Shown: positions 3,520 to 53,902 of the stretch, piece by piece
How positions within the stretch are numbered: position 1 is the first letter of the stretch
Layout of the letters: each line of letters starts with the position of its first letter
NCBI RefSeq assembly: GCF_006345805.1
Contig: NW_021833609.1
Coordinates: forward strand, 1 to 57,453
DNA from: Octopus sinensis
Taxonomy: Eukaryota
Direction of reading: 5' to 3'
DNA: 57,453 bases
Made by a program: the position numbers and the translations under genes
Notes under the pieces: model-generated
Seen by the model: the letters and a program-made list of their open reading frames with translations, nothing else
Told to the model about the DNA's origin: nothing
Database searches by the model: none

Positions 3520-3758
3520 TATTTTGTGAGTCAGCCTATTATTTACTGCAAGAACTGGAGGCTGTATTTCCGTTTCCTTGCACTGGAATAATAGACAGCT
3601 TGTCATTGGCTACAACACACATTACATACTACACAACGAACTTGAGAGAACTATATAAAACTATTACATACCAAACTACTCAGAACTATTGCTACAACTT
3701 TGTTACCAGAACACTGTAATAACACAGTAACAACTGTATAAACAACTTACAACTGTTG
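3520..3758 (+). promoter_or_regulatory. Conserved promoter-like block + non-coding leader exon of Pcdh gene A
   Basis: TGAGTCA 3527-3533, TTCCGTTTCC 3568-3577, GACAGCTTGTCATTGG 3594-3609, then an A/C-rich ATG-free leader and donor CTGTTG|GTAAGT at 3758/3759. Same block precedes every full gene. TSS not known. Confidence 0.7.
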
Positions 3759-4809
3759 GTAAGTACTTATTAAAAGTTATTTTGCTAAGTAAATTGGTTC
3801 TTTAAATATTTGTTTATCTCTCCTTGTTACCAACCATCTTTGTAAAACTACATCAGTATATATCAGATTAGTACTTCCTGAATAATAATTTTGTTGATTT
3901 TTTTTTGTGATCTTTTGTTAATTGTTCGAAATACATTTTCAAGAAGTATTTAAAATTAATTTTTTGAAAGAACACATTCAATTTACCATTATTTCAAAAA
4001 AAATAAATATATGTAGCTATTTACATCCATCAAAATATTTACTGTATTTGTTTTATACAATATTTCTCAATCAAGTCATATTTAGTTAGAATATAAGTTA
4101 ATAATGATAGGGTATAAGCGTAATTATTACAAGATGTAGATTACGTTAATTTATTTTTCTTTTCTTTTCTTTTTTTCTTTTTTTTCGATTCATTTTAAAA
4201 TATAGCATAGTCTATTTCCAGTAGGTTGTTTTTAATTTAAAATGATAGCTTAGGCAGATTCATCATCAAGGGAGATTACTTCTAATGAACCAACGATCGA
4301 GCCGTTATGTGGTTATTGGGACTGTTAGAAATAACAGCTAATTTTCCTAACATTGCGAGACAATTTATTCTTAGTGACCCAACGATAGACCCATAACGTG
4401 ATTATCGAAAATAACACCCATACCTCACTCGAATCCCACTCTCTTCGTCATTCGAATGGGCAGGAGACATTTAGTTGAGTTGTATAGGGATCAACAATTG
4501 TTGATCATGGTTGACTTGGAGTCAATTAACATAAGATTCAACACTAATTGTGCGTGTACTAATATTCTAAGTAATCTCAAAATCTAATGAGTTCTGTTAG
4601 ATTCAGGTGAGAAAAGTGTTTTCAGAGGCTTTATATTTAGTTTTTATTCGTATCATTAATCTTTGTGTATATTGATTACTTTGTTTAACATTTGTGTATT
4701 CATTGTCAGATACGAGTTAAATTCAATTTACATGTGTTATTATACATGGTCGATCTATCTATCTATCTGCTTCTCTATGTTTGTGTTTATGTGTGCTCTT
4801 TATTATACA

Positions 4810-5312
4810 CTAGCAGTATCGCCTGGCGTTGCTCAGGTTTGTAAGGGAAATAACTATATAAGCATTTTTAGAGAGTTACTTCCCTTATAGATGCCAATTC
4901 GGGCTTTCTTAGCCATTTCTGTTTTGGTGTCTTCAAGCCATGAAGTCGTTGTTCTAAAAGAACGCTGGTCTCCTTGACAACGCTTTACGACGTTGATTTC
5001 CTTACACTCCCTTCTCCACAGCTTCACGAGGGAGGGAAGAAGGGGGAGAAGCAACACAGGTGTGAGCGTGGACGCCAACTCCGCCGCCATCGACACACGA
5101 AAAAATATGCATTAAAATGGAATAAAAAATGTTAAATTATTTTTAAAATCGTAGACTCATCGTAGACGCGCGCTAATACCCAGACGGGCTCGATATGAAT
5201 CACGACTATAAGATACCCGAATTTGATTAAACTGCACCGCAAAATGTTGGAATAGATAGGAATCTAAATAGAAGGGGACAGACACTCACACAACTAGTTT
5301 TATATATATAGA
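4810..5312 (-). mobile_element. Non-autonomous Helitron-like element
   Basis: On the minus strand it starts TC (A|TCTATATA) and ends with a GC hairpin (CTGAGCAACGCCAGG) followed by CTAG|T, inserted in an AT dinucleotide. Related to copies at 42476 and 48649. Confidence 0.65.
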
Positions 5313-5563
5313 TGTAAAACTATAAAAGAGTTCAATATTTCGTTGTATTAAGCACAGAGAATCTATTGCATGTTGTAATTAAGAATACTACATATGTATG
5401 TCTGCATGTATGTATGTATATATGTATGTTCCCTAGTGTATTCAGCCCATGATTAACAAAGCATGGTACAGCTATATGCTACTCAATTATACACACTAAT
5501 AAAGGATGACCCTATGTATGTATAGACACTACAGCTTCTCTTAAAGTGACACATTATTCACAT

Positions 5564-5972: not shown

Positions 5973-6810
5973 TTTCCATAGTACTCCTTTGCCAGCAACA
6001 ATTTCTATAAACACCAACTAATCAACTCTCCCTTATGAACAAACACATAAATGCCACTACAGTCTCGTATTATCCAGTCGTTCCACCCTCTCTCATTGTA
6101 CTCCACCTATACTGTTTCTCATTCCTTCTAGCACAACCTTTCCCATCTCCATTTCCTCCTCCATAGTGTCACCATACTCTCTCTCTCTCTCACCTTAGTT
6201 TATCATCTGTGGTTACCCTTTCTTTCTGTTGAAATTGTACCTCCAACAAAATATATGGGATGCTGAGAAATTTGATACAAATTTAAAGCTTTCAGATTCC
6301 AAGGGGTGTTATAATTATGTAAGTTAATTGCTCTCTGAATCTTGGAGAAAATTTATTAGAATTCTTCTGAATGTAATTCTGAGATACCTTAATTTAAATA
6401 CCAAATAAAAGATACATGTGAAGAATAAGTCAAATCAGATACAGCTTGCATTATATAATGCTTATCTCAAATATATTTCTAAGTATGGGACACATACACA
6501 CACATCTATCTATCTATCTATCTACATATATATAAACACATGCATATATATGGAAATGCATTATATATATATATATATACATATACACATACACACACAT
6601 AATATATTATACATATATATATATATATATTGTGTGTGTGTGTGTTCAGTTGTATGCAAAACTAAAAATTTGGATTAAATAGCTGAAACTAAATAGAATT
6701 TAGAGAAGAATGTAAAGGCACTAAATGTTAAAGAAATTTTTTCTTTACATTTATTAGATTCACATTTGTATATACAAACTTTAATCAAAAATTTTTTTTT
6801 CAGATCGAAG

Positions 6811-9189
6811 ATGATTTCAGTGATATTGTTGATTGTGGTGCTGATGGCTAACAGCTGCCGGTGTGTGGATCATATCTACCATATAAAAGAGAATAATGAT
6901 GTACACAGCTTCATTGGAGATATTGTCAGTGATACACATTTACTGGATAATATACAGACTCGAGATGATAGCAACAAACTGACATTTAATGTACTCCAGG
7001 GTGGTACTGATGGAGGTGTTCAGTTATTTAATGTTACACCTGGAGGACAACTGTACACAGCTGCCATATTGGATGCAGAATCTCTTTGTCAATATAATGT
7101 GGAATGTTTCAGGATATTGGAAATAGCAGTTCAAGAAGGCCATTCTTTTATGAAAATATTAGAAATCAAAGTTGTAATAGAAGATGTCAATGATAATTAT
7201 CCTATTTTCCCAAACAAAGAATTTCATTTAACATTTGATGAAAGTGATTCAAAAGGCTCAAAAGGAAGAATTCCAAAAGCCATCGACAATGATGTCAGTA
7301 CTCAAAATTCTAAACTTGTATATCAGCTTAAAAAAGGTGAAGATATTCCTTTCAAACTGTTCGTTTCTAAAGAATTAGATGGAACAGATTTACTGCAACT
7401 AACTTTGGAAGGCAACTTAGATCGTGAGAAAAAAGACATTTACAATTTTCAGTTGATTGCAAGAAATGGGGGATCTCCGCAAAAGGAAGGTGTACTGGAT
7501 ATAATGATATCAGTACAAGATGAAAATGATAATTCCCCAGTGTTCTCCCAGAATATCTATAACATCACTATCAATGATACACACCAGATAAACAAACCTG
7601 TTCTAAGACTTTCTGCCACAGATTTAGATATGGGGGGAAATGGAAAAATTTCTTATACTCTCAGTCCTAAAACACCGAATAAGATAAAAGAATGCTTTCA
7701 ATTGAACAGAGTAACTGGAGACTTATTTGTAACAACAGAATTTCAGTTTGGAAAATCCTATAAAATACTTGTCAAAGCCACAGATAATGGTAAACTGCCT
7801 TTGTCCTCAATTGCCACTGTTTTCATAAATGGTATCAGTCACATTAACAATTCACCAAACATTGACTTCAGATTTGTCATTAAGTCAACGGGAAACACAG
7901 CTGCAATCTCAGAAGCATCTAAAATTGGCAGTTTTGTTGCCTATGTCAAAGTTACTGACAGTGACAATGGAGCAAATGGCCAAGTGAAATGCCATTTACA
8001 AAACAGATATCTTCAGCTAATTTCAATTTCTGAAAAGAAATACAAAGTTGTTGTCAAGAGTGAAATAGATAGAGAGAGTGAGAAGAGCTTTAATTTCACC
8101 ATTAAATGTCTAGATAATGGTTTACCTCCGTTGAAAGTAGAGAAACGGTTTTCTGTGCTGGTTACTGACATAAATGATGTACAACCTCAGTTTAGTCAGG
8201 ACATATTTAAGTTTCTCACCTATGAAAATGAACACAAAGACTTCCCTGTTGGATATGTCAATGCCACAGACCCAGATATTGGAGATGGAGGACAATTAAC
8301 CTATTCTCTATTATCTAATGGAAAAGATATTCTACCATTTCAGATATCTGATGTGGGATTCATTTCCACAACTGAGTCCCTAGACAGAGAAGAAAAGAAC
8401 CTGTATGAGTTTAAGGTTTTAGTAAAAGATAAAGGAACACCATCACTGGAGAAGAGAGCAAATGTTGTTGTTGAGGTTATGGATTTAAATGATAATGCTC
8501 CCTATTTCAGTTTCCCTAATGTTGACCCTTTCAGTCTTAATGTCCACTACCATCCCCACTCTGACCATGATATCACAGTTGTTAGGGCCTCTGACAGAGA
8601 CAGCCAACACAATGCCTTCCTCACATATGAAATACTCAGAGGTAATGAGAAACACTTATTTCAAATGAACCATCACTCTGGTGTCTTATCTTTCTCTCGC
8701 TCACTTTACCAAAATGATGCTGGATTCTATGAACTGGAATTAGGTGTGAAAGACAGTGGCAGTCCAGTTCTGTCATCGACAACAACTTTGTCTTTGACTC
8801 TCACAGTTAGTAACAGCACATCAAAGATATTTAAGACCCCTTCAAAGACAACAACAGAATCAAGTAATGGTCTCCAATTGAATGTGATGATTGTTATTGT
8901 TATAGCAGCTGTGATCGTATCAGTTGTCATAGTGATCTCTATATCGATCTGTATAGTTCATAGACTGAAGCAGACAGACAACAACTATAACAACAGTGTT
9001 GATATGTACCACAAGGTTACACCTGCATTAAACGTGCAATCAAAATATATATTTGATCCTACCTGTGTTCCTCCTGGAGTTCAGTACACAGTGGAGAGAA
9101 ATCTGAAGAAACCCCAACAACCAATGGTAGATAGAGAAGATATTCAGTACAGAACCATGCCAATGATCAGATTAAGAGAAAATCAACAG
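6811..9189 (+). CDS. Protocadherin gene A, large exon (signal peptide, EC1-EC6, TM, juxtamembrane tail); CDS join(6811..9189,9505..9655,11338..11657), 949 aa
   Basis: Acceptor ttttcag| at 6803, ATG 6811 (MISVILLIVVLMANSCRC). Cadherin motifs DVNDN, LDRE, DENDN, DINDV, DLNDN; EC1 LCQYNVEC loop; TM VMIVIVIAAVIVSVVIVISISICIV. Phase-0 donor CAG|GTAAGA at 9189. Confidence 0.95.
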
Positions 9190-9504
9190 GTAAGATAATT
9201 TTCCATTAATTTCAAAGTATTTCGCCTTTCAAAATTCCAGTATTAACATGAAATTTGAAGTAATTTACGAAGAACTTTCGAAGCAGTGCTACAAAAGGCA
9301 AAAGATGAAGATAATCATATTTTATCAATTCTAATTTCTGCAATGAAGATTCCAAATTATTGTTTAATATTTTATACTAACACACATGATAATTATTATG
9401 ATCTATATAAATGGTGATACTTGATGTTACACCTTATAATATGCAAACAAAACAAGAATTATGAAATGTCATGAAATAGAGTGGATCTATTTTACTGTTT
9501 CTAG

Positions 9505-9655
9505 ATGTTTGTTCCAAGAGAAGAAAGTATGTCTCCAGGTTACAGAGAACTAAATAGTGCTGACCAATTCACTGAGATGTCAACATTGTCATCTCTCACT
9601 GATAGTGGTCATGGGTGGAGTGTTGGCAGTGCTGGACACTATGAGGAACTGCCAG
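9505..9655 (+). CDS. Protocadherin gene A, 151-bp cytoplasmic exon
   Basis: ctag|ATG...CCAG|gtaag, phase 0 to phase 1. MFVPREESMSPGYRELNSADQFTEMSTLSSLTDSGHGWSVGSAGHYEELP. Same length in all five paralogs. Confidence 0.9.
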
Positions 9656-11657: not shown

Positions 11658-13069
11658 TGCTAAAGTACTTAGAAACAGATGGCTCACAGATGTAGAACTA
11701 GTATACCGAGTGACTAAATACTTGGTCGTATTCTATGCTTGTTCGTGTACTAAGTTCAAATTATATCCCACCGGAGACGACCTTGCCAATCATTTGCCAG
11801 GGTCTTCTATACTTGTTTGCATGATTTAAGCTTATCTTATTATTAACTATATCAAAAATAATTTTTATTTATATAACAGTTTGTATATTACAATGAATAT
11901 TTTGAATGAAAGTATATAAAAAAAAATAATCATAATGTATTTCAATAATGCTTGCTCAAGAAATACTTCAGAGTATGTCTGACCAGAATTATATAATACC
12001 AATGTTATAAACCTTAAATATATGATCCATATATTTTCAAATTTGATCTTTAATTGACTCCAAGAAATAAGAAAAAGGAAATATAATGGAATTATCAAAA
12101 TATCTGGAGTGACTGGTACATTTAAGAGTGAAATATCCTCCCAAACGACCAGTTGATATCTACCAAGGTGTGCTTGGGGGGAACTTATAACCATTCGTGT
12201 TTTGGAAGCTATCAGAGTATATATACTTACACTATCTGGATATACATCGTGAAGCCATACAAAAATACATAACACATCTATCCATTATACTTTCTGGGAA
12301 TTTTATAAAACGCATTGCTGATAGGCCAAGTATTGAAATTACCCTATCATAAATAGATTAACTTTCATTTAAGTACAGAAAAAGCAATGCATTTCCCCTT
12401 GTTATCAAAATATACAAAATACATATGTGTTTCTTAATATTCAGCCATAGTTTACCATTTCTAAACAATATAAAGAATATGCATTATTGATTAGTTGTTA
12501 AGGAAACTAGGAGTTTCCAAAGAAGAAAAGAAAAGAACAAAATTTTTTTTTACATAATTAGCTATATGATATAAGAATGTAACAGAAATGAATTGAGATC
12601 AATTTTAATTGATATTTATGTTAAGTCTCAAATGTGAAAACTCCATAGACACATTTTCCATTTCATACTTTTTATTTTCTACAGGGAACATTAGAAATAA
12701 GTGGCCATTTTCTAATCATTATTGAATACAATTATTTGGAGCCATAATTTCGTATTTTCAAATGAGCTCAACAATTTTATAATGAAATTAACTTCTAAAA
12801 ATATTATTCAATAACATTTATTAAGTTTATCTCAAGCAGATAATTTTGAAAAGTCAAAGAGAAATCTGAGATGAAAAGTTTTATAACTTTGACTGAAGTT
12901 AGAAAATAACTTTTATGCATTAAAATTAAAATGTAATTTATTTTTAATAGACTTTAATTTTATATTTCATTGCTTTAAACTTTATTAATATTTCCATCCA
13001 TTTAGTTGGGTTTCTTCTCACCACACACATGTATATGTATGTATCTATACATGAGTGTGTCTAAGTGAA

Positions 13070-13317
13070 ATATTTTGTGAGTCTGCCCATCATTTACTGC
13101 AAAAGTTGGAGGCTGTATTTCCGTTTCCCTGCATTGGAATAAAAGACAGCTTGTCATTGGCTACAACACACATTACACACTACACAACCAACTTGATAGA
13201 ACTATATAAAACTATTACATACCAAACTACTCAGAACTTCTGCCACTATTAAAACTTTGTGTTGCCAGAACATTGAAAAAGTTCATTAAGAACAATATAA
13301 ACAACTGACAACTGTTG
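13070..13317 (+). promoter_or_regulatory. Conserved promoter-like block + leader exon of Pcdh gene B
   Basis: TGAGTCT 13078, TTCCGTTTCC, two ATTGG, GACAGCTTGTCATTGG 13145-13160, donor CTGTTG|GTAAGT at 13317/13318. Confidence 0.7.
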
Positions 13318-14981
13318 GTAAGTATTTATTAAAAGTTATTTTGTTGTGTAAATTGGTTCTTCAGATATTTGTTCATCTCTCTACCAGTAACCTACAATCC
13401 AGGAAATACTACATCAATGTATAAGTCAGATTAGTACTTCCTGTATTACAATGTTATTTTCAAACGTCTTTTACTTAATTATTTCCAATACATTTTCTAC
13501 AAATATTGAAGCTTGGACGTTTCTAAAAAATAAAAAAACTGTTTATTGTTATTTTAACAGCTATATAACAATTACATTCTTTGAATACATATTTCTTTCT
13601 TCAGTATTCTCAGTTTTGTCATCTATATAGTAATAGTTTAAGTTAATAACGACAGGATATAATTATGATAATGGCAAGATGTAGATTATATTAGTTGAAT
13701 TCTTAACGAACTTTTTGCTCAATATTGTGAAATGCTCACTATTCTATTTTCTTTAGACTGATTCATTTTATGAATGAGCGATTGCGTAGGGTTTATTAGC
13801 AAGGGAGGTTACTCTTAACGTACTAATGAGGAAGTTGTTTAGGCTGTTGATTGACCTGTTAGAGATGACAGTCAAACCTCCCTCGAATCATATCCCCCAG
13901 TCTTGAGAAACAGAATGTCACGTAACATAGTGTATTTTTCAAATTTTCTAAAAGCTTGAATGTTTTGGATCATAGATCTGTTCGTTCTTGCTGACCTGGG
14001 GCTAAACAGCAACAGTAACTCTTAATGACTCCATTATACGTACATTATTTACATTTGATGGATATTTGTCCTCATCTTGTTTGTTGTTAACACAACTTTT
14101 CGGCTGATATACCTTCAAGCCTTCTTCAGGTATCTTGGGGAAATTTCGAACCTGGGTTCTCATTCCTGAGGTATTTTTCGCTGTTACAGATATTATTATT
14201 AACATTATAATCTCATTTTCCATGCCAGAATTGAATGGTCAGTTTCACAAGAGCCAGCGAGTTGTACTGCGTCAAGCTCCAGTCTCTGCTGTAGTATGGT
14301 TTCTACAGCTGGATACTCTAGCCATTTCAGTGTGTAGTGGGTGCATTTATGTGGCACTATCACTAGTTAGGTCAGTGTAAACTGGCAATACAGGACCGTG
14401 GAGCTGACTGGGATGTGTTGAGGGAAGTGGTTACATGCCAGGTGATAAGAAATTAAAATATGATAAAGAGATAAAAATAGGTGTCTTGTAGAGGAGATAC
14501 ATGATTACTCCAATTAGAAAGGGAAAGATGGTGATGAGGTGTGAAGATGTACCCTTAGAAGTTGAACATAAAAGAAGTGGGCTAGACAGTGACACAGGGT
14601 GAATGAGTTGGAAAGTTGACGAGTGTGGTCAAATAATATTTCCCAGTGTCAAACTGTGATTTTACTTACAATTATGTAAATCTGGTATGTTAACCAAGTA
14701 AACAATCATTGACATACTGCTATTAAAAAGAAGAGGGCAAGAACATAAATATAATTTTATTCAGATATACTTTCATTTCCAAAGAATTTAATCAAATTTT
14801 ATTAAAGAATCATAATTCTGTCTTCACTTTTATGTTTAATGTTGATGGTTGATTTTAATAGTTTGAGAATTATATTTGACTTGTGATTGATTTACGGGAC
14901 TAAATGTTAAGATGTATTTTATCTACATTTATTAAATTCTTCTTTGTGAATATCAGCATGTAATTATATTTCAGATTCAAA

Positions 14982-17357
14982 ATGTTTCCAGTATTAATGT
15001 TGATGCTGTTGTTGTTGGCTGAGAGCTGCCTTTGTGTGGACCATACCTACCATGTGAAAGAGAACAATGATGTACACAGTTATATTGGAGATATTGTCAC
15101 TGATACACACTTAATGGATAATATACAGTCCCAGGATAACAGCGACAAACTGACATTTAATGTTATCCAGGGTGTTACTGACGGAAGTGTTCAGTTGTTT
15201 AATGTTACACCTGGAGGACAACTGTACACAGCTTCCATATTGGATGCAGAAATTCTTTGTCAGTATAATGTGGAATGTTTCAGGATATTGGAAATAGCAG
15301 TTCAAGAAGGCCATTCTTTTATGAAGATATTAGAAATCAAAGTTATGATAGAAGATGTCAATGATAATTATCCTATATTTCCAAAAAAGGAACTTAAAAT
15401 ACAATTTGATGAAAATGATTTGATAGGAACGACAGAAACACTTCCCAATGCTATTGACAAAGATTTCAGTGTTCAGAATTCTAAACTCTCTTATCAACTG
15501 AAAGCAGATGAAGATATTCCTTTCAAATTGTTTGTTTCTAAGAAATCAGATGGAATTGATTTATTACAACTAATTTTGGAAAGTAACTTGGATCGTGAGA
15601 AAAAAGATGTATATAATATACTATTAATTGCCAGAGATGGAGGATCACCACCAAAGGAAAGTATATTTCATATACAAATATTGGTAGAAGATAAAAATGA
15701 TAACTCCCCTGTTTTCTCGCAAAATATCTACAATGTTACTGTAAATGGTACGCACAGAATAAACAAACCTATTCTGAGGTTGTCTGCAACAGATTTAGAT
15801 GAAGGAGAAAGTGGAAGAATTTCTTATATCTTTAGTAATGCCAAAACACCAAATAAAATAAAAGAATGCTTTAAGTTGGATGAAGCAACAGGAGAGTTGT
15901 TTCTGAAGCAAAAATTTCAGTTTGGAAGAATTTATAAATTATTTGTTGAAGCCAGAGATAATGGTATTCCTTCAATGTCTTCAACAGTTCCCATTCTAAT
16001 AAATGGAATCAGTCACATTAACAATCCACCAAACATTGATATCAAATTTGTTATAAAGTCAACTGGAAACACAGCTTTCATCTCAGAAGCATCTAAAATT
16101 GGCAGTTTTGTTGCTTATGTCAAAGTTACCGACAATGACAGTGGAAAAAATGGACAAGTGAAGTGTCATTTACAAAACAGATATCTTCAGCTAATCTCAG
16201 TGTCTGAAAAGAAATACAAAGTTGTTGTCAAGAGTGAAATAGATAGAGAAAGAGAAAAGAGCTTTAATTTCACCATTAAATGTCAAGATAATGGTTTACC
16301 TCCATTGAAAGTAGAGAAACAGTTTTCAATGCTGGTTACTGACATAAATGATGTACAACCTCAGTTTAGTCAGGACATATTTAAGTTTCTCACCTATGAA
16401 AATGAACACAAAGACTTCCCTGTTGGATATGTCAATGCCACAGACCCAGATATTGGAGATGGAGGACAATTAACCTATTCTCTATTATCTAATGGAAAAG
16501 ATATTCTACCATTTCAGATATCTGATGTGGGATTCATTTCCACAACTGAGTCCCTAGACAGAGAAGAAAAGAACCTGTATGAGTTTAAGGTTTTAGTAAA
16601 AGATAAAGGAACACCATCACTGGAGAAGAGAGCAAATGTTGTTGTTGAGGTTATGGATTTAAATGATAATGCTCCCTATTTCAGTTTCCCTAATGTTGAC
16701 CCTTTCAGTCTTAATGTCCACTACCATCCCCACTCTGACCAGGATATCACAGTTGTTAGGGCCTCTGACAGAGACAGCCAACACAATGCCTTCCTCACAT
16801 ATGAAATACTCAGAGGTAATGAGAAACACTTATTTCAAATGAACCATCACTCTGGTGTCTTATCTTTCTCTCGCTCACTTTACCAAAATGATGCTGGATT
16901 CTATGAACTGGAATTAGGTGTGAAAGACAGTGGCAGTCCAGTTCTGTCATCGACAACAACTTTGTCTTTGACTCTAACAGTGAGTAACACCACATCAAAG
17001 ATATTTAAGACCTCTTCAAAGACAACAACAGAATCAAGTAATGGTCTCCAATTGAATGTGATGATTGTTATTGTTATAGCAGCTGTGATCATATCAGTTG
17101 TCATAGTGATCTCTATATCGATCTGTATAGTTCATAGACTGAAGCAGACAGACAACAACTATAACAACAGTGTTGATATGTACCACAAGGTTACACCTGC
17201 ATTAAACACCCAATCGAAATATATATTTGTTCCTCCTGGTATTCAGTACACATTGGAGAGAAACATGAGCAAATCTCAACAACCCATGATGGATATGGAA
17301 GGTGTTCACTGCAGTGATGGATGGGGTAAACCAGCTTTCATTGAAACACATCAACAG
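14982..17357 (+). CDS. Protocadherin gene B, large exon; CDS join(14982..17357,18954..19104,19399..19703), 943 aa
   Basis: Acceptor tttcag| at 14974, ATG 14982. Six cadherin repeats + TM. Donor CAG|GTAAAA at 17357 (phase 0). Confidence 0.95.
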
Positions 17358-17551
17358 GTAAAATATTTGTCAGCTATTTAATAATGTTGAAATATGTGTA
17401 TTAATTACTGAAGCCTAGTTTGACCAATGCATTGTGAGTGAATTTGGCCAATAGAAACTGCATGAAAGAAATCCCATGTGTGTGTGTGTGTACTATATTT
17501 TATTAAATGTTCTCAATATTTCGATTAACAACAATCTGAATGGAAGATAAT

Positions 17552-20683: not shown

Positions 20684-21234
20684 TTACATGCATTTGTTAA
20701 ACTAATTTAAAACAACAAAATATGTTAAAATCGTCATAGACATAGAATTTGGACCAAAAAATTTAATTGTACAAAAAGATGCAAACTTCTAAGGATATAA
20801 TTCTTTTGCAAAATCTGTTTTTGAGATATTCCATTTATTCATATTCTCACTATAAGCATGCCACTTTTAATATAATCTACAATTTTGTAAGTATTTCAGT
20901 AATTTAATAATGAGATAAACTACTCTAAAAATATTTTAAAATTGATATTATAGATTTGGTGAGTAAAAAGTTATGTCTAGCCAATAGAAAATTAAAAACT
21001 TGATTTTCAAAAAGCTTTATAACTTTTACTTAAATCGTGAAATAGCAATTATTTTCATTGATAATTAAAATACTTTAAAGTATTTCATAATAACATTTTT
21101 CAGCATTTATTGAGTGTTTGACCACAATGTTCTGCTCACTAACGTTTTCATAAACCATACTCATAAATTATATACTCCATATGTTCACACACACTTATGT
21201 ATATGTATGTGTGTGTGTGGGGGGGGGGAAGTAA

Positions 21235-21485
21235 ACTTGTCTGTGAGTCAGCCCATCATTTACTTCAAGAACTGGAGGCTGTACTTCCGTTTCCTTGCAT
21301 TGGAATAAAAGACAGCTTGTCATTGGCCACAACACATATTACACACTACACAGCCCACTTCATAGAACTATGTAACAGTGTGTGTCACATACCAAGCTCC
21401 TACTATTATTACAACTTCGTTACCAGAACACTGGAACAATACAGTTACAACTGTAGAAGCAACTGGCAGAAGTATAAACAACTTG
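21235..21485 (+). promoter_or_regulatory. Conserved promoter-like block + leader exon of Pcdh gene C
   Basis: TGAGTCA 21244-21250, TTCCGTTTCC, GACAGCTTGTCATTGG 21311-21326, donor ACTTG|GTAAGT at 21485/21486. Confidence 0.7.
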
Positions 21486-26816: not shown

Positions 26817-27300
26817 TTATACCATGCTGCTGCGAGATTCTGTTAGATTCCTTAAGTTCCATTTCAAAGCAAGATTATATGCTTATATTTTAAACTGTGT
26901 GTGCATGCATGCTTTAAGACATCCCTACTCTAACTAATGAATAATGGAAAATACAGAATATTTATAGATTGTGCAATGAGCATGCAAGCTTAATGTAGGT
27001 GCAGGCATAACTGTTTAGTTAATAAGTTCAATTCTTGACCATGTGATTTCAATTTCTTTCCCACCACATAACATTAACTGTAATTAACAGTATTCTATAC
27101 TGTAGCTTCTATATTATCATAATTATATTCAAAGTGTTAATATATCCTGTAATTGTTTTTAATGTTGAAGATTATTTTAACCTTACTACAGTATGCATAA
27201 TTTATTTTTATATAATTACATTAGAAGAGTATAACCATATCTATTTCCTATGTGCATATCCATTTCAGACCAGTGGAATATATTGAAGAAAATTAAAGAG

Positions 27301-36631: not shown

Positions 36632-36843
36632 AGTGTATGTGGACAGCCTATCATTTACTGCAAGAACTGGAGGTTGTATTTCTGTTTCCTTGCATTGGAA
36701 TAATAGACAGCTTGTCATTGGCTACGACACATATTACATACTACACAACGAACTTGGTAGAACTACTTAATACTTTCACACATCAAACTGCTCGGAACTC
36801 CAGCTGCAACAGTAACAACTGCTTAAACAACAGACAACTGTTG
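36632..36843 (+). promoter_or_regulatory. Conserved promoter-like block + leader exon of Pcdh gene D (5' part degraded)
   Basis: GACAGCTTGTCATTGG 36706-36721 and donor CTGTTG|GTAAGT at 36843/36844 are intact. TGAGTCA is replaced by TGGACA and TTCCGTTTCC by TTCTGTTTCC. Confidence 0.65.
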
Positions 36844-37148: not shown

Positions 37149-37213
<65 letters not shown>

Positions 37214-42870: not shown

Positions 42871-43146
42871 TATACTAGAGGAGAGTGAATGTTGCAATAA
42901 TACACTTATGAACATCTAATGTATAATACAGCTGTCAAGTTCTTTATTTGTTTAAGCTAGAATTTGAGACACATTATTGGTCAAATAAAGTAGTTAATAT
43001 CCAAATCACTGATTGCTATTTGATATTACTTACATAATGTTTTGAGATGATTATGAGTTAGCTACTCGAATTGTTAATCACTAGATATCAGGGAATGATT
43101 TATATACAATTTAGCATTTTATTTCAGATTGGCAAATCCTATACTA

Positions 43147-45543
43147 ATGAAGATGTTATCAGTGATACTGTTGGTGTTGTTAATGACTGAAAGCTGCTGG
43201 TGTGCGTATCATATCTACCGCATGAAAGAGAACAATGATATAAACAATTATATTGGAGATATTGTCACTGATATGCACTTACTGGATGATATACAGACTC
43301 AAGATGATAGAAGCAAACTGACATTTAAAATACTCCAGGGTAGTACTGATGGAAGTGTTCAGTTGTTTAATGTTACACCTGGAGGACAACTGTACACAGC
43401 TGCCATATTGGATGCAGAAACATTGTGCCAATACAATGTGGAATGCTTCAGGATTTTGGAAGTAGCAGTTCAACATGGCCATTCTGTTATCAAGATATTA
43501 GAAGTCAAAGTTATAATAGAAGATGTCAATGATAATTCTCCTATATTTCCAAATAAGGAATTTCAAGTGTCATTTGATGAAAGTGTGACCAAAGGAATCA
43601 AAGAAATCATTCCAAATGCGATTGATAACGATATTAGCTCTCGGAATTCTAAACTCAATTATCAACTGAAGGAAAATGAAAATGTTCCTTTTCAATTGGT
43701 TGTTTCTAAGTCACGTGGAACTGATTTATTGCAACTAATTTTAGAAGGTTCCTTAGACCGTGAGACAAAAGATATGTACAATATTCAGTTAATTGCCAAA
43801 GATCAAGGAACACCACCAAAGGAAGGTGTATTGGATATAAAAATATTAGTGGGAGATAAAAATGATAATTTTCCTGTTTTCTCCCAGAATATTTACAATG
43901 TCACTATAAATGATACATACCAGAGAAGCAAGCCTCTTGTTAAGGTCTCTGCATCAGACTTAGATAAAGGGGAAAATGGAAGAATTTCTTATGTCTTTAA
44001 TAATGTTAAAACACCTAAAAGGATAAAAGAAAGCTTTAAATTAGAGGAGGCAACAGGGGAGCTATTTTTGAAGAAAGAATTTAATTTTGGTGAGATTTAC
44101 GAGATATTTATTGATGCCAGAGATAATGGTAAACCACCTATGTCATCAACAGTCACAGTTTTTATAAATGGTGTCAGTCATCTTAACAATCCTCCCAAAA
44201 TTGATGTTAAATTTGTTATAAAGTCAACTGGAAACACAGCTGTCATCTCAGAAGGAACTCAAAATCAAAGTTTTGTTGCTTATGTCAAAGTTACCGACAA
44301 TGACAGTGGAGAAAATGGACAAGTGAAATGTCATTTACAAAATAGATATCTTCAGCTAATCTCAGAGTCTGAAAAGAAATACAAAATTATTGTCAAGAGT
44401 GAAATAGATAGAGAGAGTGAGAAGAGCTTTAATTTCACCATTAAATGTCAAGATAATGGTTTACCTCCATTGAAAGTAGAGAAACAGTTTTCTATGCTGG
44501 TCACTGACATAAATGATGTACAACCTCAGTTTAGTCAGGACATATTTAAGTTTCTCACCTATGAAAATGAACACAAAGACTTCCCTGTTGGATATGTCAA
44601 TGCCACAGACCCAGATATTGGAGATGGAGGACAATTAACCTATTCTCTATTATCTAATGGAAAAGATATTCTACCATTTCAGATATCTGATGTGGGATTC
44701 ATTTCCACAACTGAGTCCCTAGACAGAGAAGAAAAGAACCTGTATGAGTTTAAGGTTTTAGTAAAAGATAAAGGAACACCATCACTGGAGAAGAGAGCAA
44801 ATGTTGTTGTTGAGGTTATGGATTTAAATGATAATGCTCCCTATTTCAGTTTCCCTAATGTTGACCCTTTCAGTCTTAATGTCCACTACCATCCCCACTC
44901 TGACCAGGATATCACAGTTGTTAGGGCCTCTGACAGAGACAGCCAACACAATGCCTTCCTCACATATGAAATACTCAGAGGTAATGAGAAACACTTATTT
45001 CAAATGAACCATCACTCTGGTGTCTTATCTTTCTCTCGCTCACTTTACCAAAATGATGCTGGATTCTATGAACTGGAATTAGGTGTGAAAGACAGTGGCA
45101 GTCCAGTTCTGTCATCGACAACAACTTTGTCTTTGACTCTCACAGTTAGTAAGAACACATCAAAGATATTTAAGACCCCTTCAAAGACAACAACAGAATC
45201 AAGTAATGGTCTCCAATTGAATGTGATGATTGTTATTGTTGTAGCAGCTGTGATCGTATCAGTTGTCATAGTGATCTCTATATCAATCTGTATAGTTCAT
45301 AGGTTGAAGCAGACAAATAGAAACTATAATAGTAGTGTTGATATGTACCATGGTGTTATACCAGCATTAAATATGCAATCAAGATATATGTTTTATCCTG
45401 CTTGTGTTCCTCCTGGAGTTCAGTACACATTGGAGAGAAATGTGAAGAAATCTCAACAACCAATGGTAGACAGAGAAAATATTCACTGCTGGACTATGAC
45501 AAATGATAGACGGGTTGAACCAGCTTCAGTAAAACATCATCAG
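43147..45543 (+). CDS. Protocadherin gene D, large exon; CDS join(43147..45543,46053..46203,48082..48416), 960 aa (ATG 43153 is the start homologous to paralogs)
   Basis: Acceptor tttcag| at 43127, first in-exon ATG 43147. Six cadherin repeats + TM. Donor CAG|GTGAGA at 45543. Confidence 0.95.
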
Positions 45544-46052: not shown

Positions 46053-46203
46053 GTATTTCTCCCAAGAGAAGAAAGTTCATCTCCTGGTTACCAAGAGCTA
46101 AACAGACCTAACGAATTCAATGAGATATCAGCAATGTCCACTCATACTGATAGTGGGCATGACTGGGTTGTTGGTAGTGCTGATCACTATGAGGAACTGC
46201 CAG
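46053..46203 (+). CDS. Protocadherin gene D, 151-bp cytoplasmic exon
   Basis: tttag|GTATTTCTCCCAAGA...CCAG|gttagt. VFLPREESSSPGYQELNRPNEFNEISAMSTHTDSGHDWVVGSADHYEELP. Confidence 0.88.
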
Positions 46204-46231
46204 GTTAGTTAAAAATACTGACTCTCTCTTC

Positions 46232-48081: not shown

Positions 48082-48416
48082 GTCTGTACTGTTATCAAAG
48101 TGACCATACGTGGAACAGGAGAAATCCACTTCCATGCACGCCCAGTGGTTCAAAGAGAGATAATAATGGATATCAACCTAATGGTGACAATATCACTGAT
48201 AACCAAATACCTTTGACTATATTTGATAATACATCTAAGATCACTGAACAACCATCTACTGTACCAATGACAAGTCACTTTACTTCGAACAGTAAACCAG
48301 CACTACCAGCTGTACCTAAAGCAACAGCACTACCAAAAGTACCTTCAATACCTCAGGTACCTTCAGTTTCCATAGTAAAAAATATGCACAGTAACTCTAC
48401 GGAAACACTGTATTAA
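48082..48416 (+). CDS. Protocadherin gene D, terminal exon
   Basis: ttccag|GT CTG TAC TGT. GLYCYQSDHTWNRRNPLP...PALPAVPKATALPKVPSIPQVPS...ETLY*. Confidence 0.88.
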
Positions 48417-50357: not shown

Positions 50358-52730
50358 TTCTGTCATCAACAATAATTTAGTCTTTGACTCTAACAGTTAG
50401 TAAGAACACATCAAAGATATTTAAGACCCCTTCAAAGACAACAACAGAATCAAGTAATGGTCTCCAATTGAATGTGATGATTGTTATTGTTATAGCAGCT
50501 GTGATTGTATCAGTTGTTATAGTGATCTCTATATCGATCTGTATAGTTCATAGACTGAAGCAGACGGACAACAACTATAACAACAGTGTTGATATGTACC
50601 ACAAGGTTACACCTGCATTAAACACGCAATCAAAATATATATTTGATCCTACTTGTGTTCCTCCTGGTGTTCAGTACACAGTGGAAAAAAAAATCTTCAG
50701 AAATCTTAACAACCAATGGTAGACAGAGAAGATATTCACTGCAGAAGTGTATCTGACCAATGGGTAGATCTGAGCCTAAGAAATCATCAACAGGTGGGAT
50801 TTTTAATAATCTATTCAGAGTTGTTTTTCTAATTCAACTGTCCTATTTGCCTGGTTTTTTTTTCAAAATTTGAGATGGGGTGAACAAAATGTTTATTCTA
50901 CATTGAAATTATTTCATAAAGACTAAAAATTTACCAGAGCTTGTAAAAAGTAAAATTCTTTGATATATTTTATTTCAAATATTGCATCAGACATTTAGAA
51001 TCAATAAAAGCATAAATAGCTATATTCTTTCAAAATTCTTTTAATATTGAATAACTTCATTTTTATTCTTTGAATTCTATGACATACTTACTAACCCGTT
51101 AATTAATATTTCAACCTTTGCTGTTGTGGCAAAATCTAATTATTCTTTAAGGGAACTTAATGTGGAAGTTATAGGCTTTGGTTTATTCCTTGAATTGCCT
51201 ATTTCTATTTATTTATTGCAATTCTTCAGAATATTTTTCTATTTCTCATTTGTTTTTTTTGTTTTTTTATAGATATTTGTTCCAAGAGAAGAAAGTATGT
51301 CACCAAATTATAAAGAACTAAACAGCACTAACCCCTTCAGTGGGATGTCAACATTGTCATCTACCACGGACTGTGGTCATGGATGGAGTGTCAGCAATGC
51401 TGGACACTATGAAGATCTATCAGGTCAGTTAAATATGCCTAATATTTCTGCAGTTTCAGATCATAATTTATGTAAATCCTCACCATCATGGTTTTTTACA
51501 TCCACTTTCCATGCTGGCATGGGTTGGAGAGGTTACCTCAGTCAGTTTGGTGTGTTCGCTCATGAGTTTCCTTTTTGGCTTGGTTTCTATGGTTGGATAC
51601 TCGTTGCAATGCCAACTATTTCCTCGGCTTCCACCATGGCTTCAAGACAACTCAAGAACCTGGCAAATGTGTTCTTCACTGTGTCACCGAGTAGATCTTG
51701 AAACACCTCCTTGATCTTGGTCACCAGATTGGCCTTGGTGTTGCAAGAAAAGTAGTTGATACCATTTTTGGCCTTGCCCCACTCATAGTGCCAATAAGAT
51801 TACAATATGTGTAATTGGGTGGGAGACAGAAATCGGAGCTGATGAAATCACAGAATTTCTTCTACAACCACTTCTGATTCTTCCTGGAGATATGGCAAGG
51901 TACTGAGTCCTGCTTTCACACATATGTGGCCTCCAAGCAGCAACACCAGCCAAAGCTTGACCAAAGTCTCCAGCAGCTTCACAACGTAACGACAGACGAA
52001 ATACCGTTAAGCATTTTGCATGGCGCGCTAATGTTTCTGCCTGCTCGCCGCCTTCAATGCTCTCTAATGCCATCGGCTGTTCCCCAATGCATCAAACTGC
52101 TCCTTGAAAAAAAGATGACATAAAAGATCATCAAATTTAGCTGAACAATTTCTATGAGTAGGAAATAAATGGATACGAAGCAAACTTCTCAAACATGCTT
52201 CTATTTTACACTGGTTAGATATTATATTGATATTTTTTAATCATGGAACTTAAACATATATATATCATCAAATAAAAGAATACTGTAAAAAAATGAATTT
52301 AATTTAGGAATTTCTTTCAATAAATTTTGTACCAAAGATATCTTAAATCACTCAAAATAAATGTTTCCATATATATTTGTTGTAACCAAAGTGACTACAG
52401 AACTTACTGACACTTTTGTTAAAATTCTGAGTGAGATGTCAATCTTCAATCCCTATTTCTACAGATCTGTGTCGCTACCAAGGTGATTGCACATGGAATA
52501 CGAGAAACCAATTACCACACACACTGAACAGATCAAGGGGAGATAACAATGGATGTAACTCTGAACCTAATGTTGACATGAACACTTCCTGTTGCCCTGA
52601 CCAAATACCTTTGACTATAACAGGTACCACATCTAACATAATTGAACAACCACCTTCAGTAGCAATGGCAATCTGTATACCACCTCTACCATCTGTACCT
52701 AAGGTGACAACACTACCAAAAGTACCTTGA
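50358..52730 (+). pseudogene. 5'-truncated protocadherin pseudogene E (end of EC6 + TM 50358-50793; 151-bp exon 51273-51423; terminal exon 52465-52730)
   Basis: Homology starts abruptly at ~50358, with no promoter block or EC1-5. It has a +2 frameshift in the A9 run (~50685-50693), CAA>TAA in the paralog frame just after it, and TCA>TGA at 52728-52730. Splice sites at 50793, 51273/51423 and 52465 are still GT/AG. Confidence 0.85.
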
Positions 52731-53651
52731 ATACATCAGGCGCCTCCAACAAATATTAACTACTAACAATGCACAAATTCATACATAAAACTATTAATAT
52801 AAAATTTCATTAAATCTTACAAGTAAAATAGTAATTAATGTTATAAATATATATATTGTTTTTGTATAGCTACATTCTCTTCAGTCATATGCAATAGCTA
52901 TGATAAATTTAATTCTTTGTAAGAAGGAAAATATTTAAGACTGTCATTCTAAATAAGAAAATGTTTTTGAAGTCCACTAAGATCCTCAAACTTCTACAAA
53001 CCTTTGCTTCTATATTTTAATATAGTGTAAGGAAAAAAGTAATTATCGAAATGTAACAAATAATTAAATCAGTTGTTGATTATTTGATAATTGTTAAAAA
53101 AAAAAACCCCTCCAATAATCATAAAATATTCTTTATTAGTCCAGTTAGCTTGTGTGATACACACACACACATATATATATAGTAACAGACAACATACAAA
53201 TAATGCAAATATGTATATAGTCTTATTGTTTTGAAATTAGTATTTTAAGCTTCTAAATCTAAATTCATTTAGGTGTAGAAAGTCATTTCATATGTTGATT
53301 ATTGTTGAGCCTCTAATTCAAAGCCATAATTTCGTATTTTCAAATTAGTATTAAGAGTTAAATATATTGAAAAGCATTTAAGGGGATTTTTTAATAAATT
53401 TTGCCAAAATTTTACTAAATAATGGCTGGTATATAAAGGTTATTGAAAATTTTAAACTTTTGATGTTGGAAACTTTTCTAACTTTTACCAAATTTATAAT
53501 ATAAAGATTTTTTTTTAAATCTTGGAAAACTAAATATTTAATCATATTTTCATAAGTTTATTGCTTTGCCTCAGTTTTCTAGACATTAAATATTCTACCT
53601 TATTCATTCTGTAACACATACATATGTATATGTATGTGTGTGGGCTTAAGT

Positions 53652-53902
53652 AAACTAGTCTGTGAGTCAGCCCATTATTAACTGCAAGAACTGGAAGCTG
53701 TACTTCCGTTTCCTTGCACTGGAATAAAAGACAGCTTGTCATTGGCTACAGCACACATTACATACTACACAGTCCACTTCATAGAACTACATAGCACTAT
53801 TACATACCAAACTGCTCAGAATTCCTGCTACTACTACAACTTTTTGATGCCAGAACTTTTAAACAGTACAGTAACAACTTTAAGAATATATAACAACTGT
53901 TG
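53652..53902 (+). promoter_or_regulatory. Conserved promoter-like block + leader exon of Pcdh gene F
   Basis: TGAGTCA 53663-53669, TTCCGTTTCC, GACAGCTTGTCATTGG 53730-53745, donor CTGTTG|GTAAGT at 53902/53903. Confidence 0.7.

What the first reader, a model, noticed from the sequence alone, without database searches (positions are those of the whole stretch)
3520..53902. Every octopus-type Pcdh gene has its own copy of a conserved promoter cassette and non-coding leader exon (a possible invertebrate analogue of the vertebrate CSE / promoter-choice system)
Seen: five copies (3520, 13070, 21235, 36632, 53652), one before each gene with an intact 5' end and none before truncated gene E. They lie 1.7-6.3 kb upstream of the large exon, across TE-filled introns. 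The ~110-bp core appears better conserved than the EC2-EC3 coding DNA. GACAGCTTGTCATTGG is invariant in 5/5 copies, and TGAGTCA and TTCCGTTTCC are near-invariant. Each copy ends in the same TTG|GTAAGT donor after a G-poor, CAA-rich leader. Established: vertebrate clustered Pcdhs use a conserved sequence element in each promoter for stochastic promoter choice, and cephalopod arrays expanded independently. Inference: a shared cis-code (AP-1-like, tandem ETS-like GGAAACGGAA, NF-Y CCAAT, and a GACA-GCT-TGTC dyad like a TALE-homeodomain site) lets equivalent promoters compete for a shared enhancer or be co-regulated, giving neuronal barcodes.
Basis: partly seen in the sequence, partly recalled or inferred. 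Interest (0 to 1): 0.82.

Follow-up and report, generated by a model that had tools for sequence, protein, structure and literature searches.

The report
Shared promoter-leader cassette of octopus protocadherins
Each gene in one tandem family of about 25 octopus protocadherin genes has its own copy of a conserved ~250-bp block that is most likely its promoter plus a short non-coding first exon; one 20-base piece of the block occurs almost nowhere in the 2.7-Gb genome outside the protocadherin region, but nothing here shows that it drives vertebrate-style random promoter choice.

Summary
Five same-strand copies of a ~250-bp block lie 1.7-6.3 kb upstream of the five protocadherin (Pcdh) genes with intact 5' ends. 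All five carry the invariant 16-mer and end in TTG|GTAAGT. The genome is Octopus sinensis, and the window is a haplotig of chr14:6.03-6.09 Mb.

The block is not a dispersed repeat. It occurs only in one array (C14:5.91-6.14 Mb), about 25 copies, one per gene unit.

It is conserved upstream of the same subfamily in O. bimaculoides and Argonauta hians. Between Octopus and Argonauta the core is 76-98% identical, while flanks are unalignable and 4-fold sites are 55-77% identical.

Canonical acceptors sit 7-34 nt before each ATG. The leader is G-poor, ATG-depleted and unstructured. NCBI's gene model uses one predicted junction.

The best reading is a proximal promoter plus a 5'-UTR exon under purifying selection.

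The claim that every Pcdh gene has it is wrong. More than 100 other Pcdh exons lack blocks A and B. Block C (CCAAT plus a TGACA-type half-site) recurs at 15 more sites, all in the chr14 Pcdh region on the gene strand.

It is not a vertebrate conserved sequence element (CSE): there is no CGCT box, no CTCF-like site and no shared constant exons. Promoter choice remains untested.

The parts
3512..3758 (+). Cassette 1 (gene A). Core blocks: A 3525-3550, B 3555-3579, C 3594-3618. The leader ends at the donor TTG|GT at 3758.
13063..13317 (+). Cassette 2 (gene B). The AP-1-like site is TGAGTCT here. The 16-mer is at 13145-13160 and the donor at 13317.
21229..21485 (+). Cassette 3 (gene C). The 16-mer is at 21311-21326 and the donor at 21485. 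NCBI's chimeric model XP_036355489.1 translates through this block and uses its donor.
36635..36843 (+). Cassette 4 (gene D). Block A is lost, the ETS-like CpG is mutated (TTCTGTTTCC) and the leader has a ~36-bp deletion. The 16-mer is at 36706-36721 and the donor at 36843. SINE-like elements bracket it at 36108-36510 and 36952-37378.
53648..53902 (+). Cassette 5 (gene F). The 16-mer is at 53730-53745 and the donor at 53902. It is orthologous to the O. bimaculoides cassette at L051:6602-6874.
6804..9189 (+). Gene A large exon. Acceptor ttcag| at 6804, ATG at 6811, six cadherin repeats plus the TM segment. Private exon 3 is 9505-9655 and exon 4 is 11334-11627.
14975..17357 (+). Gene B large exon. 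Acceptor at 14975, ATG at 14982. Exon 3 is 18954-19103 and exon 4 is 19398-19646.
27269..29688 (+). Gene C large exon. Acceptor at 27269, ATG at 27301. Exon 3 is 30839-30988 and exon 4 is 31736-32017.
43128..45543 (+). Gene D large exon. Acceptor at 43128, ATG at 43147; it encodes XP_029644521.2. Exon 3 is 46053-46205 and exon 4 is 48075-48413.
50360..52757 (+). 5'-truncated gene E. It keeps the large-exon remnant from residue ~655 (50360-50796), exon 3 (51282-51425) and exon 4 (52476-52757). No cassette precedes it.
56967..57453 (+). Gene F large exon, 5' part. Acceptor at 56967, ATG at 57001. It runs off the end of the window.

Best explanation
**What it is.** Each block is the proximal promoter and the first, non-coding exon (5'-UTR leader) of one gene. 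The genes form a tandemly duplicated protocadherin subfamily of about 25 members on Octopus sinensis chromosome 14.

**The promoter core.** A core of about 110 bp holds three footprint-like blocks:
- Block A: TGTGAGTCAGCCCATYATTWACTGCA. It contains a TRE, or CNC/Maf-type, TGAGTCAGC site.
- Block B: CTGGAGGCTGTAYTTCCGTTTCCTT. It contains tandem GGAA ETS-like sites and the only CpG of the core.
- Block C: ACAGCTTGTCATTGGCTACAAC. It is an inverted CCAAT box of the NF-Y type, abutting TGACA(A/G) half-sites of the Meis/Prep (TALE) type.

**The transcript.**
- Transcription is inferred to start some 60-90 bp downstream of the CCAAT box.
- The leader is then roughly 80-110 nt long. It is A/C-rich, G-poor, ATG-poor and unstructured, and it ends at a conserved TTG|GTAAGT donor.
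- It is spliced across a TE-rich intron of 1.7-8.6 kb to an acceptor 5-40 nt before the ATG of the ~2.4-kb exon. That exon encodes the signal peptide, six cadherin repeats and the TM segment.
- Two small private 3' exons complete each gene, so every unit is an independent transcription unit.

**Why it is conserved.**
- The core is kept by purifying selection because it gives all subfamily members the same transcription-factor input.
- Blocks A and B are the subfamily-specific part.
- Block C is an older element shared with some other Pcdh promoters of the same chromosomal region.

**Shown and inferred.**
- Shown: copy number, specificity, periodicity, splice signals, non-coding character and cross-genus conservation.
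- Inferred: TSS position, transcription-factor identities and the regulatory outcome.
For: **Specificity**
- The exact 16-mer occurs 24 times in C14:5.919-6.141 Mb, 5 times in the window haplotig, and nowhere else in 2.72 Gb.
- BLAST with the whole cassette or the core finds only that array.
- Blocks A and B are also confined to it.

**Periodicity**
- In 190 kb of C14 there are 18 units of cassette > large exon > exon 3 > exon 4, all on one strand.

**Splice signals**
- The donor G|GTAAGT is kept in all 31 copies examined across three species.
- A polypyrimidine-CAG acceptor lies 5-40 nt before the ATG in nearly all paralogs.
- NCBI model XP_036355489.1 uses the 21485>27268 junction.

**Non-coding character**
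- Copies differ by indels that are not multiples of three.
- The leader is 7-13% G.
- It holds 11 ATGs against 43 expected over 31 copies.
- There is no Rfam family match, and the fold z-score is -0.5.

**Constraint**
- Among paralogs the core is 0.906 identical and 98% alignable. Sequence 300-700 bp either side is only 10-35% alignable, and EC1-4 4-fold sites are 0.71 identical.
- Between Octopus and Argonauta, blocks A+B are 0.876 identical, the 14-nt spacer 0.667 and block C 0.985. Flanks are 0.34-0.55, and 4-fold sites are 0.55-0.64 (EC1-4) or 0.77 (EC5-TM).
- Core identity is the same within O. sinensis (0.917) as between O. sinensis and O. bimaculoides paralogs (0.915). There is therefore no concerted-evolution signature, unlike EC5-TM (0.984 against 0.961 against 0.875).
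- The terminal cassette, which has no gene behind it, has decayed in blocks A and C.

**Block C beyond the subfamily**
- The 20-mer AGYYTGTCATTGGCTRYARC, with up to 1 mismatch, gives 46 hits against 2 for the control.
- The 15 non-subfamily hits on C14 all lie at 2.26-8.14 Mb on the strand of the Pcdh genes.
- Nine of the 15 are less than 40 kb upstream of a listed Pcdh exon (P = 2e-4).
Against: - No transcript data were reachable. No Logan transcript contigs exist for this subfamily, so the TSS and the leader-to-exon junctions are not directly shown.
- The NCBI model that uses the junction is a chimeric read-through model and may be partly ab initio.
- The TATA-like CTATATAAAA is present in only some copies.
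- Between the true orthologs of O. sinensis and O. bimaculoides, the whole neighbourhood is 0.88-0.97 identical, so that comparison adds no evidence of constraint.
- Only 3-4 Argonauta copies were seen, and they are close paralogs.
- One orphan cassette, at C14:5953757, is still intact although only an exon-4 remnant follows it.
- The transcription-factor assignments rest on consensus matching alone.
Confidence: 0.77

Rival explanations
1. It accepts that the cassettes are promoters and adds a mechanism. Because the cassettes are equivalent, they compete for a shared distal enhancer or are silenced epigenetically one by one. Each neuron then activates a sparse, stochastic subset of the array. 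This would be a functional analogue of the vertebrate CSE system.
For: - The roughly 25 promoters of one array are near-identical.
- The core has a single CpG, sitting in the ETS-like site. It is lost by CpG>TpG or CpA in 3 of 18 copies, which would fit a methylation-sensitive switch.
- Octopus vulgaris brain cells express on average about 19-21 of about 170 Pcdh genes (PMC9712504).
- Block C is essentially exclusive to the Pcdh region.
Against: - There is no CGCT box and no CTCF-consensus site anywhere in 200 kb of the array.
- There are no shared constant exons.
- No enhancer has been identified.
- Published single-cell data report cell-type-enriched and ubiquitous Pcdhs, not stochastic choice.
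- Identical promoters are equally well explained by plain co-regulation.
- Nothing in the sequence can separate choice from co-regulation.
Confidence: 0.15
2. The similarity is only a by-product of recent tandem duplication or gene conversion, as in the EC5-TM part of the coding exon. On this view the block has no sequence-specific function beyond any ordinary promoter remnant.
For: - The array arose by tandem duplication.
- The 3' half of the large exon is demonstrably homogenised: 0.97-0.996 identity including third positions.
- O. sinensis and O. bimaculoides orthologs are about 92% identical throughout the non-coding neighbourhood.
Against: - Sequence immediately flanking the block is unalignable among paralogs, and EC1-4 4-fold sites are only 0.71 identical.
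- The block shows an internal footprint pattern between genera: 0.985 and 0.876 for the blocks against 0.667 for the spacer.
- There is no within-species excess of identity: 0.917 against 0.915.
- Block C persists at Pcdh genes that are only 46-54% identical in protein sequence.
Confidence: 0.05
3. The block is a distal regulatory element placed between gene units, an enhancer or a boundary element, or it is a dispersed repeat or ncRNA gene. On this view it is not the promoter and first exon, and the GTAAGT motif is incidental.
For: - It lies 1.7-8.6 kb from the coding exon.
- No transcript evidence was available here.
Against: - The donor is invariant in 31 copies across three species, and a matching acceptor sits just before every ATG.
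- Strand and order are strictly fixed.
- There are no copies outside the array.
- There is no Rfam match and no stable RNA fold.
Confidence: 0.03

Closest known systems
Conserved sequence element (CSE) of vertebrate clustered protocadherin promoters
   Same: Both are short conserved elements repeated once in front of each member of a tandem Pcdh array, at a fixed position and orientation relative to the transcription start. Subfamily-specific flanking conservation also occurs in vertebrates, where the CGCT box is surrounded by cluster-specific sequences (PMC4978886). The gene layout without constant exons resembles the Pcdh-beta cluster.
   Different: There is no sequence homology. The CGCT box and any CTCF-type motif are absent. 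The CSE lies ~200 bp upstream of the ATG within the variable exon (PMC7811963, PMC4978886). The octopus block is separated from the ATG by a 1.7-8.6 kb intron and carries its own leader exon. Its motif content is CCAAT/TGACA, GGAA and TGAGTCA. It covers one subfamily, not nearly all clustered genes. CTCF binding, looping and stochastic choice are unknown here.
Mammalian odorant-receptor gene promoters (from my own knowledge, not tested here)
   Same: Both belong to large tandem families in which every gene has its own promoter with a shared small motif set, one or more short non-coding 5' exons, and a single large coding exon reached across an intron. In both, the shared promoter code is a candidate substrate for restricted expression per neuron.
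   Different: The motifs and factors differ: O/E-like and homeodomain sites in odorant-receptor promoters against CCAAT/TALE-like, ETS-like and TRE-like sites here. Singular choice is proven for odorant receptors and is unknown here.
NF-Y (CCAAT) plus TALE (Prep/Meis/Pbx) co-occupied promoter-proximal elements
   Same: The reverse strand of block C reads AGCCAATGACA(A/G)G. That is a CCAAT box directly abutting a TGACAG-like HEXA half-site, and the variant at other Pcdh genes (AGCCAATGACAGGCT) is a perfect TGACAG. [quoted passage not shown]
   Different: In zebrafish the TALE site is mostly the 10-bp DECA motif TGATTGACAG, with the CCAAT box nearby rather than overlapping. Binding by octopus NF-Y or Meis/Prep is not tested. 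The main subfamily has TGACAA, one mismatch from HEXA.
Chelicerate shortened-Dscam arrays with tandem 5' cassettes and alternative promoters
   Same: This is an invertebrate tandem array of neuronal recognition genes or exons in which each unit is transcribed from its own promoter (cited in PMC6339937).
   Different: There the variable 5' cassettes are spliced to shared constant exons. Here every gene has private 3' exons. No shared promoter motif comparable to blocks A-C is known to me.

Membership tests
Vertebrate Pcdh CSE / CTCF-binding promoter element | A highly conserved CGCT box within the element | tested here: not met
   No CGCT or AGCG occurs in any of the 18 cassettes (-85 to +175) in C14.
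Vertebrate Pcdh CSE / CTCF-binding promoter element | A CTCF recognition sequence, with CTCF binding | tested here: not met
   A loose CTCF core regex gives 0 hits in 200 kb of the array. A 9-mer core gives 9 scattered hits, none recurrent per unit. Only the consensus was tested; no PWM and no binding assay was possible.
Vertebrate Pcdh CSE / CTCF-binding promoter element | [quoted passage not shown] | tested here: not met
   The block lies 1.7-8.6 kb upstream and is separated from the ATG by an intron.
Vertebrate Pcdh CSE / CTCF-binding promoter element | One copy in front of (nearly) every member of the clustered array | tested here: inconclusive
   This is met within the ~25-gene subfamily. 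It is not met for more than 100 other Pcdh exons on the chromosome. Block C alone is found at 15 further sites.
Vertebrate Pcdh CSE / CTCF-binding promoter element | Mediates stochastic, methylation-controlled promoter choice through enhancer looping | not testable with these tools
   This needs single-cell RNA, methylation and 3C data.
RNA polymerase II proximal promoter plus non-coding first exon | Upstream of the gene it serves, on the same strand, one per gene | tested here: met
   18 of 18 units in C14 and 5 of 5 in the window. The same holds in O. bimaculoides and Argonauta.
RNA polymerase II proximal promoter plus non-coding first exon | The exon ends in a consensus 5' splice site, and a matching 3' splice site precedes the coding exon | tested here: met
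   G|GTAAGT is present in all 31 copies. A polypyrimidine-CAG acceptor lies 5-40 nt before the ATG.
RNA polymerase II proximal promoter plus non-coding first exon | Not protein-coding | tested here: met
   Copies differ by indels that are not multiples of three. The signal peptide starts in the large exon. ATGs are depleted, 11 against 43 expected.
RNA polymerase II proximal promoter plus non-coding first exon | Transcripts start in the block and are spliced from its donor | not testable with these tools
   There is only indirect support: NCBI model XP_036355489.1 uses 21485>27268. No transcript contigs were found for the subfamily.
Dispersed repeat / transposable element | Copies scattered through the genome, away from Pcdh genes | tested here: not met
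   The 16-mer, the whole cassette and blocks A and B occur only in C14:5.91-6.14 Mb and the window haplotig.
Structured non-coding RNA gene | A match to a known RNA family, or a fold more stable than shuffled sequence | tested here: not met
   There are 0 Rfam matches in the window. The leader folds at -12 kcal/mol, z = -0.52.

The most novel reading that the evidence does not exclude
Block C, the CCAAT/TGACA composite AGYYTGTCATTGGCTRYARC, has 44 of its 46 genomic matches inside the chromosome-14 Pcdh region. It may be a Pcdh-specific 'address' element that recruits a dedicated factor complex. With the subfamily-specific blocks A and B and the single CpG, it would let neurons pick a sparse subset of equivalent promoters. 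This would be a convergent, CTCF-independent counterpart of the vertebrate CSE system.
Probability: 0.12. Interest if true: 0.85.

Novelty: new variant of a known kind. Interest (0 to 1): 0.52.

Why it matters
Octopuses expanded protocadherins independently of vertebrates: O. sinensis has 161 genes on chromosome 14 (PMC9795677). How these genes are regulated is an open question. I found no paper in the held library that describes a promoter motif for them.

The cassette gives experimenters concrete handles:
- predicted transcription starts and splice junctions for about 25 genes;
- three short conserved blocks for footprinting, DAP-seq, EMSA and reporter mutagenesis;
- a 20-mer that marks a subset of Pcdh promoters and almost nothing else in a 2.7-Gb genome.

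It also corrects the annotation, because NCBI's 3921-residue model on this contig fuses four genes and translates a promoter. If the promoters prove to be chosen stochastically, this would be a second, mechanistically different solution to neuronal barcoding. If they are simply co-regulated, the finding is an ordinary though well-defined family promoter.

Tried and rejected
- **Profile search of the whole genome.** I built a sequence-only covariance model of the core (R1). The tool refuses model searches on the window's own genome. I used IUPAC patterns for blocks A, B and C instead.
- **Fetching other C14 or C17 regions.** The 15 block-C-like sites and the C17 sites could therefore be judged by coordinates only.
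- **Full-length protein search of the own genome.** It failed twice. A 300-residue query worked, but only 131 of 913 candidates were scored, so the map of Pcdh exons is incomplete.
- **Transcript evidence.** No Logan transcript contigs carry full-length or N-terminal products of this subfamily. O. sinensis records are withheld from the look-up of encoding contigs.
- **The variant GATAGCTTGTCATTGG.** It has 11 copies, four of them on C17:42.77-42.81 Mb. I rejected it as related, because those sites do not match the 22-mer or 20-mer that extend into the 3' flank.
- **O. sinensis against O. bimaculoides orthologs as a test of constraint.** This was uninformative, because the whole neighbourhood is ~92% identical.
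- **Pfam on ten intronic or intergenic ORFs.** There were no hits.
- **TATA box.** CTATATAAAA is present in only some copies and is not conserved in Argonauta, so I did not count it as a defining part.

Full report
**1. What the window is**

- The four complete large ORFs on the + strand (6697-9198, 14964-17381, 27235-29697, 43099-45636) and the open one at 56890-57453 each carry five Pfam Cadherin repeats plus Cadherin_2.
- Their closest database relatives are Octopus sinensis, O. vulgaris, O. bimaculoides and Argonauta hians protocadherins.
- The window is contig C10080 of a 2.72-Gb, 13,516-contig genome. Its chromosome C14 (68,403,164 bp) is the contig that carries the O. sinensis proteins.
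- The window is a haplotig of C14:~6.035-6.090 Mb on the minus strand. It is 99.2-99.9% identical except around gene C.

**2. The observation**

- The 16-mer is exact at the five stated places; 0.03 matches are expected by chance.
- The five copies align over about 250 bp, from TGTGAGTCAGCC to TTG|GTAAGT.
- All five donors and all five predicted acceptors are canonical. An ATG follows each acceptor by 7-34 nt.
- Copy 4 has lost the TGAGTCA block, has TTCTGTTTCC and has a leader deletion. Copy 2 has TGAGTCT.
- The truncated gene E (50360-52757) has no copy.

**3. Gene structure**

- Mapping NCBI proteins onto the window shows that each gene has a large exon of ~800 codons, a 150-nt exon 3 and an exon 4 of ~100 codons. 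All are private to that gene.
- NCBI's own model for this contig (XP_036355489.1, 3921 aa) is a chimera of genes A-D. Between genes B and C it translates straight through cassette 3, leaves it at the 21485 donor and re-enters at 27268.
- Read-through fusions among octopus Pcdh genes are also reported by Styfhals et al. (PMC9712504).

**4. Genome-wide distribution**

- The whole cassette, the 112-bp core and the exact 16-mer are found only at C14:5.909-6.141 Mb and in the haplotig. There are 24 exact 16-mers plus one degenerate copy.
- I fetched C14:5.90-6.10 Mb. It contains 18 consecutive units of cassette > large exon > exon 3 > exon 4 on one strand. The cassette lies 1.8-8.6 kb upstream of its large exon.
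- There are three exceptions:
  - the cassette-less truncated gene E;
  - an intact cassette followed only by an exon-4 remnant (C14:5953757);
  - a terminal cassette with no gene behind it (C14:5909598), whose TGAGTCA and CCAAT motifs have decayed.
- A 300-residue EC1-3 query finds 21 exons of this subfamily (66-100% identity), all inside that interval. It also finds more than 100 other Pcdh exons (46-54% identity) at C14:0.5-13.3 and 57.2-60.7 Mb. This agrees with the 161 Pcdh genes on chromosome 14 reported in PMC9795677.
- The cassette therefore belongs to one subfamily, not to every Pcdh gene.

**5. Is it conserved beyond what duplication gives?**

Among paralogs:
- In a 25-copy alignment, mean pairwise identity is 0.84-0.97 from -75 to +50 around the 16-mer and 0.72-0.87 through the leader. 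It drops to 0.25-0.55 on both sides.
- In pairwise comparisons the core is 0.906 identical and 98% alignable, and the leader is 0.807 identical. The flanks are only 10-35% alignable.

The coding exon is a mosaic:
- EC2-EC3 is 0.66-0.75 identical, with third positions at 0.55-0.62.
- EC5-EC6-TM is 0.97-0.996 identical, including third positions.
- The latter is concerted evolution. Identity is 0.984 within O. sinensis, 0.961 to O. bimaculoides and 0.875 to Argonauta.

The core shows no such signature: identity is 0.917 within O. sinensis and 0.915 between O. sinensis and O. bimaculoides paralogs.

Other species:
- The cassette is present upstream of each subfamily gene in O. bimaculoides (3 copies in L051) and in Argonauta hians (4 copies in L052).
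- Identity between Octopus and Argonauta:

| Region | Identity |
|---|---|
| Blocks A+B | 0.876 |
| 14-nt spacer between B and C | 0.667 |
| Block C | 0.985 |
| Last ~12 nt before the donor | 0.80 |
| Rest of the leader | 0.14-0.69 |
| Flanks | 0.34-0.55 |
| 4-fold sites, EC1-4 | 0.55-0.64 |
| 4-fold sites, EC5-TM | 0.77 |

- The Argonauta-Octopus split carries a fossil minimum of ~29 Ma (PMC12682272).
- A caveat: the O. sinensis and O. bimaculoides orthologs are ~92% identical across the whole neighbourhood, so that pair says nothing about constraint.

**6. Block C beyond the subfamily**

- The degenerate 20-mer AGYYTGTCATTGGCTRYARC, with up to 1 mismatch, has 46 matches against 2 for the reversed control.
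- Apart from the subfamily copies there are 15 matches. All are on C14 between 2.26 and 8.14 Mb, and all are on the minus strand, like the Pcdh genes there. Only two matches lie elsewhere in the genome.
- Nine of the 15 lie less than 40 kb upstream of a listed Pcdh large exon, and four lie less than 10.5 kb upstream. The binomial probabilities are 2e-4 and 3e-3 against random placement. The exon list is incomplete.
- One of these sites (C14:3829086-3829169) also aligns to the cassette over 81 nt, including the ETS-like part.
- Blocks A and B give no such extra sites.
- Four genes of other subfamilies, in O. bimaculoides and Argonauta, have no cassette and no block C within 10 kb upstream.

**7. 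Nature of the leader**

- From the 16-mer to the donor is 122-190 nt.
- The composition is 38-43% A, 23-30% C and 7-13% G.
- It holds 11 ATGs against 43 expected over 31 copies. The copies are not independent, so this is descriptive.
- There is no Rfam match, and folding is no better than shuffled sequence.
- Copies differ by indels that are not multiples of three, and the signal peptide starts in the large exon.

**8. Comparison with the vertebrate CSE**

- The CSE is defined by a CGCT box, by CTCF binding and by a position ~200 bp before the ATG (PMC7811963, PMC4978886). None of these holds here.
  - No CGCT occurs in any cassette.
  - There is no CTCF-consensus site in 200 kb.
  - An intron separates the block from the ATG.
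- The only CpG of the core sits in TTCCGTTTCC. It is replaced by TG or CA in 3 of 18 copies.
- The reverse strand of block C reads AGCCAATGACA(A/G)G. This is a CCAAT box abutting a TGACAG-like half-site. TGACAG is the monomeric Prep/Meis site, and NF-Y partners with TALE factors (PMC6023610).
- This, like the AP-1/CNC-like TGAGTCAGC and the tandem GGAA, is resemblance only.

**9. Verdict**

- The promoter-plus-leader reading is well supported by sequence logic and comparative data, but it lacks transcript proof.
- The scope must be narrowed to one subfamily, with a more widely shared block C.
- The promoter-choice analogy is neither supported nor excluded.
- Nothing comparable is described in the papers I could search.

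Noticed in passing
window 16200-17100 (gene B) and the equivalent part of every large exon; C14:5.90-6.10 Mb: The EC5-EC6-TM half of the large exon is 97-99.6% identical among about 16 paralogs, including third codon positions. It is only 87.5% identical between Octopus and Argonauta. EC2-EC3 is 66-75% identical. This is concerted evolution (gene conversion) of the membrane-proximal half with diversification of the specificity-determining half, much like the gene conversion reported for vertebrate Pcdh clusters.
   Followed up: partly
window 6811-48413: NCBI's model for this contig (XP_036355489.1, LOC115230295, 3921 aa) fuses four separate protocadherin genes. It translates intergenic DNA, including promoter cassette 3 (21173-21485). 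Fused models of 5424-6653 aa also exist for C14 and O. bimaculoides.
   Followed up: yes
window 22395-25565 and 26423-31197: Compared with the chromosome copy, the haplotig carries an extra ~3.2-kb GC-rich (47-48%) insert in gene C's first intron, with 62-, 351- and 39-bp tandem repeats. The gene C region is only 90-97% identical to C14, against more than 99% elsewhere. Gene C's large ORF is intact here (820 aa) but only 664 aa on C14.
   Followed up: partly
window 33087-33330, 36108-36510, 36952-37378, 37481-37675, 39113-39520: There are five copies, direct and inverted, of a ~400-bp SINE-like element with a tRNA-like head. Two of them bracket cassette 4, which is the copy that lost block A.
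   Followed up: partly
L053 (O. bimaculoides), L054 and L055 (Argonauta hians); P0019 record: Pcdh genes of other subfamilies have their small 3' exons 17-45 kb from the large exon. Their annotated ranges of 48-135 kb abut or overlap the neighbouring gene. I did not examine whether some 3' exons are shared between genes, as in vertebrates.
   Followed up: no
C17:42771309-42809496 and nine other chromosomes or contigs of G000: The one-mismatch variant GATAGCTTGTCATTGG occurs 11 times against 0 for the control, four of them on one strand within 38 kb of C17. These sites do not share the cassette's 3' flank and are outside the Pcdh region. They are probably an unrelated repeat.
   Followed up: partly
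C14:6132287-6132887 (L006); C14:5953757; C14:5909598 (L030): Three odd cassettes stand out. One is a near-identical pair 585 bp apart, differing by 1-bp indels, which may be an assembly artefact. One is an intact cassette followed only by an exon-4 remnant. One is a terminal cassette with no gene behind it and with decayed blocks A and C.
   Followed up: partly
window 3571-3572 and the same position (23 bp upstream of the 16-mer) in all copies: The only CpG in most cassettes lies in the ETS-like TTCCGTTTCC. The three C14 copies that lack it have TG or CA there, the changes expected from deamination of methylated cytosine.
   Followed up: partly
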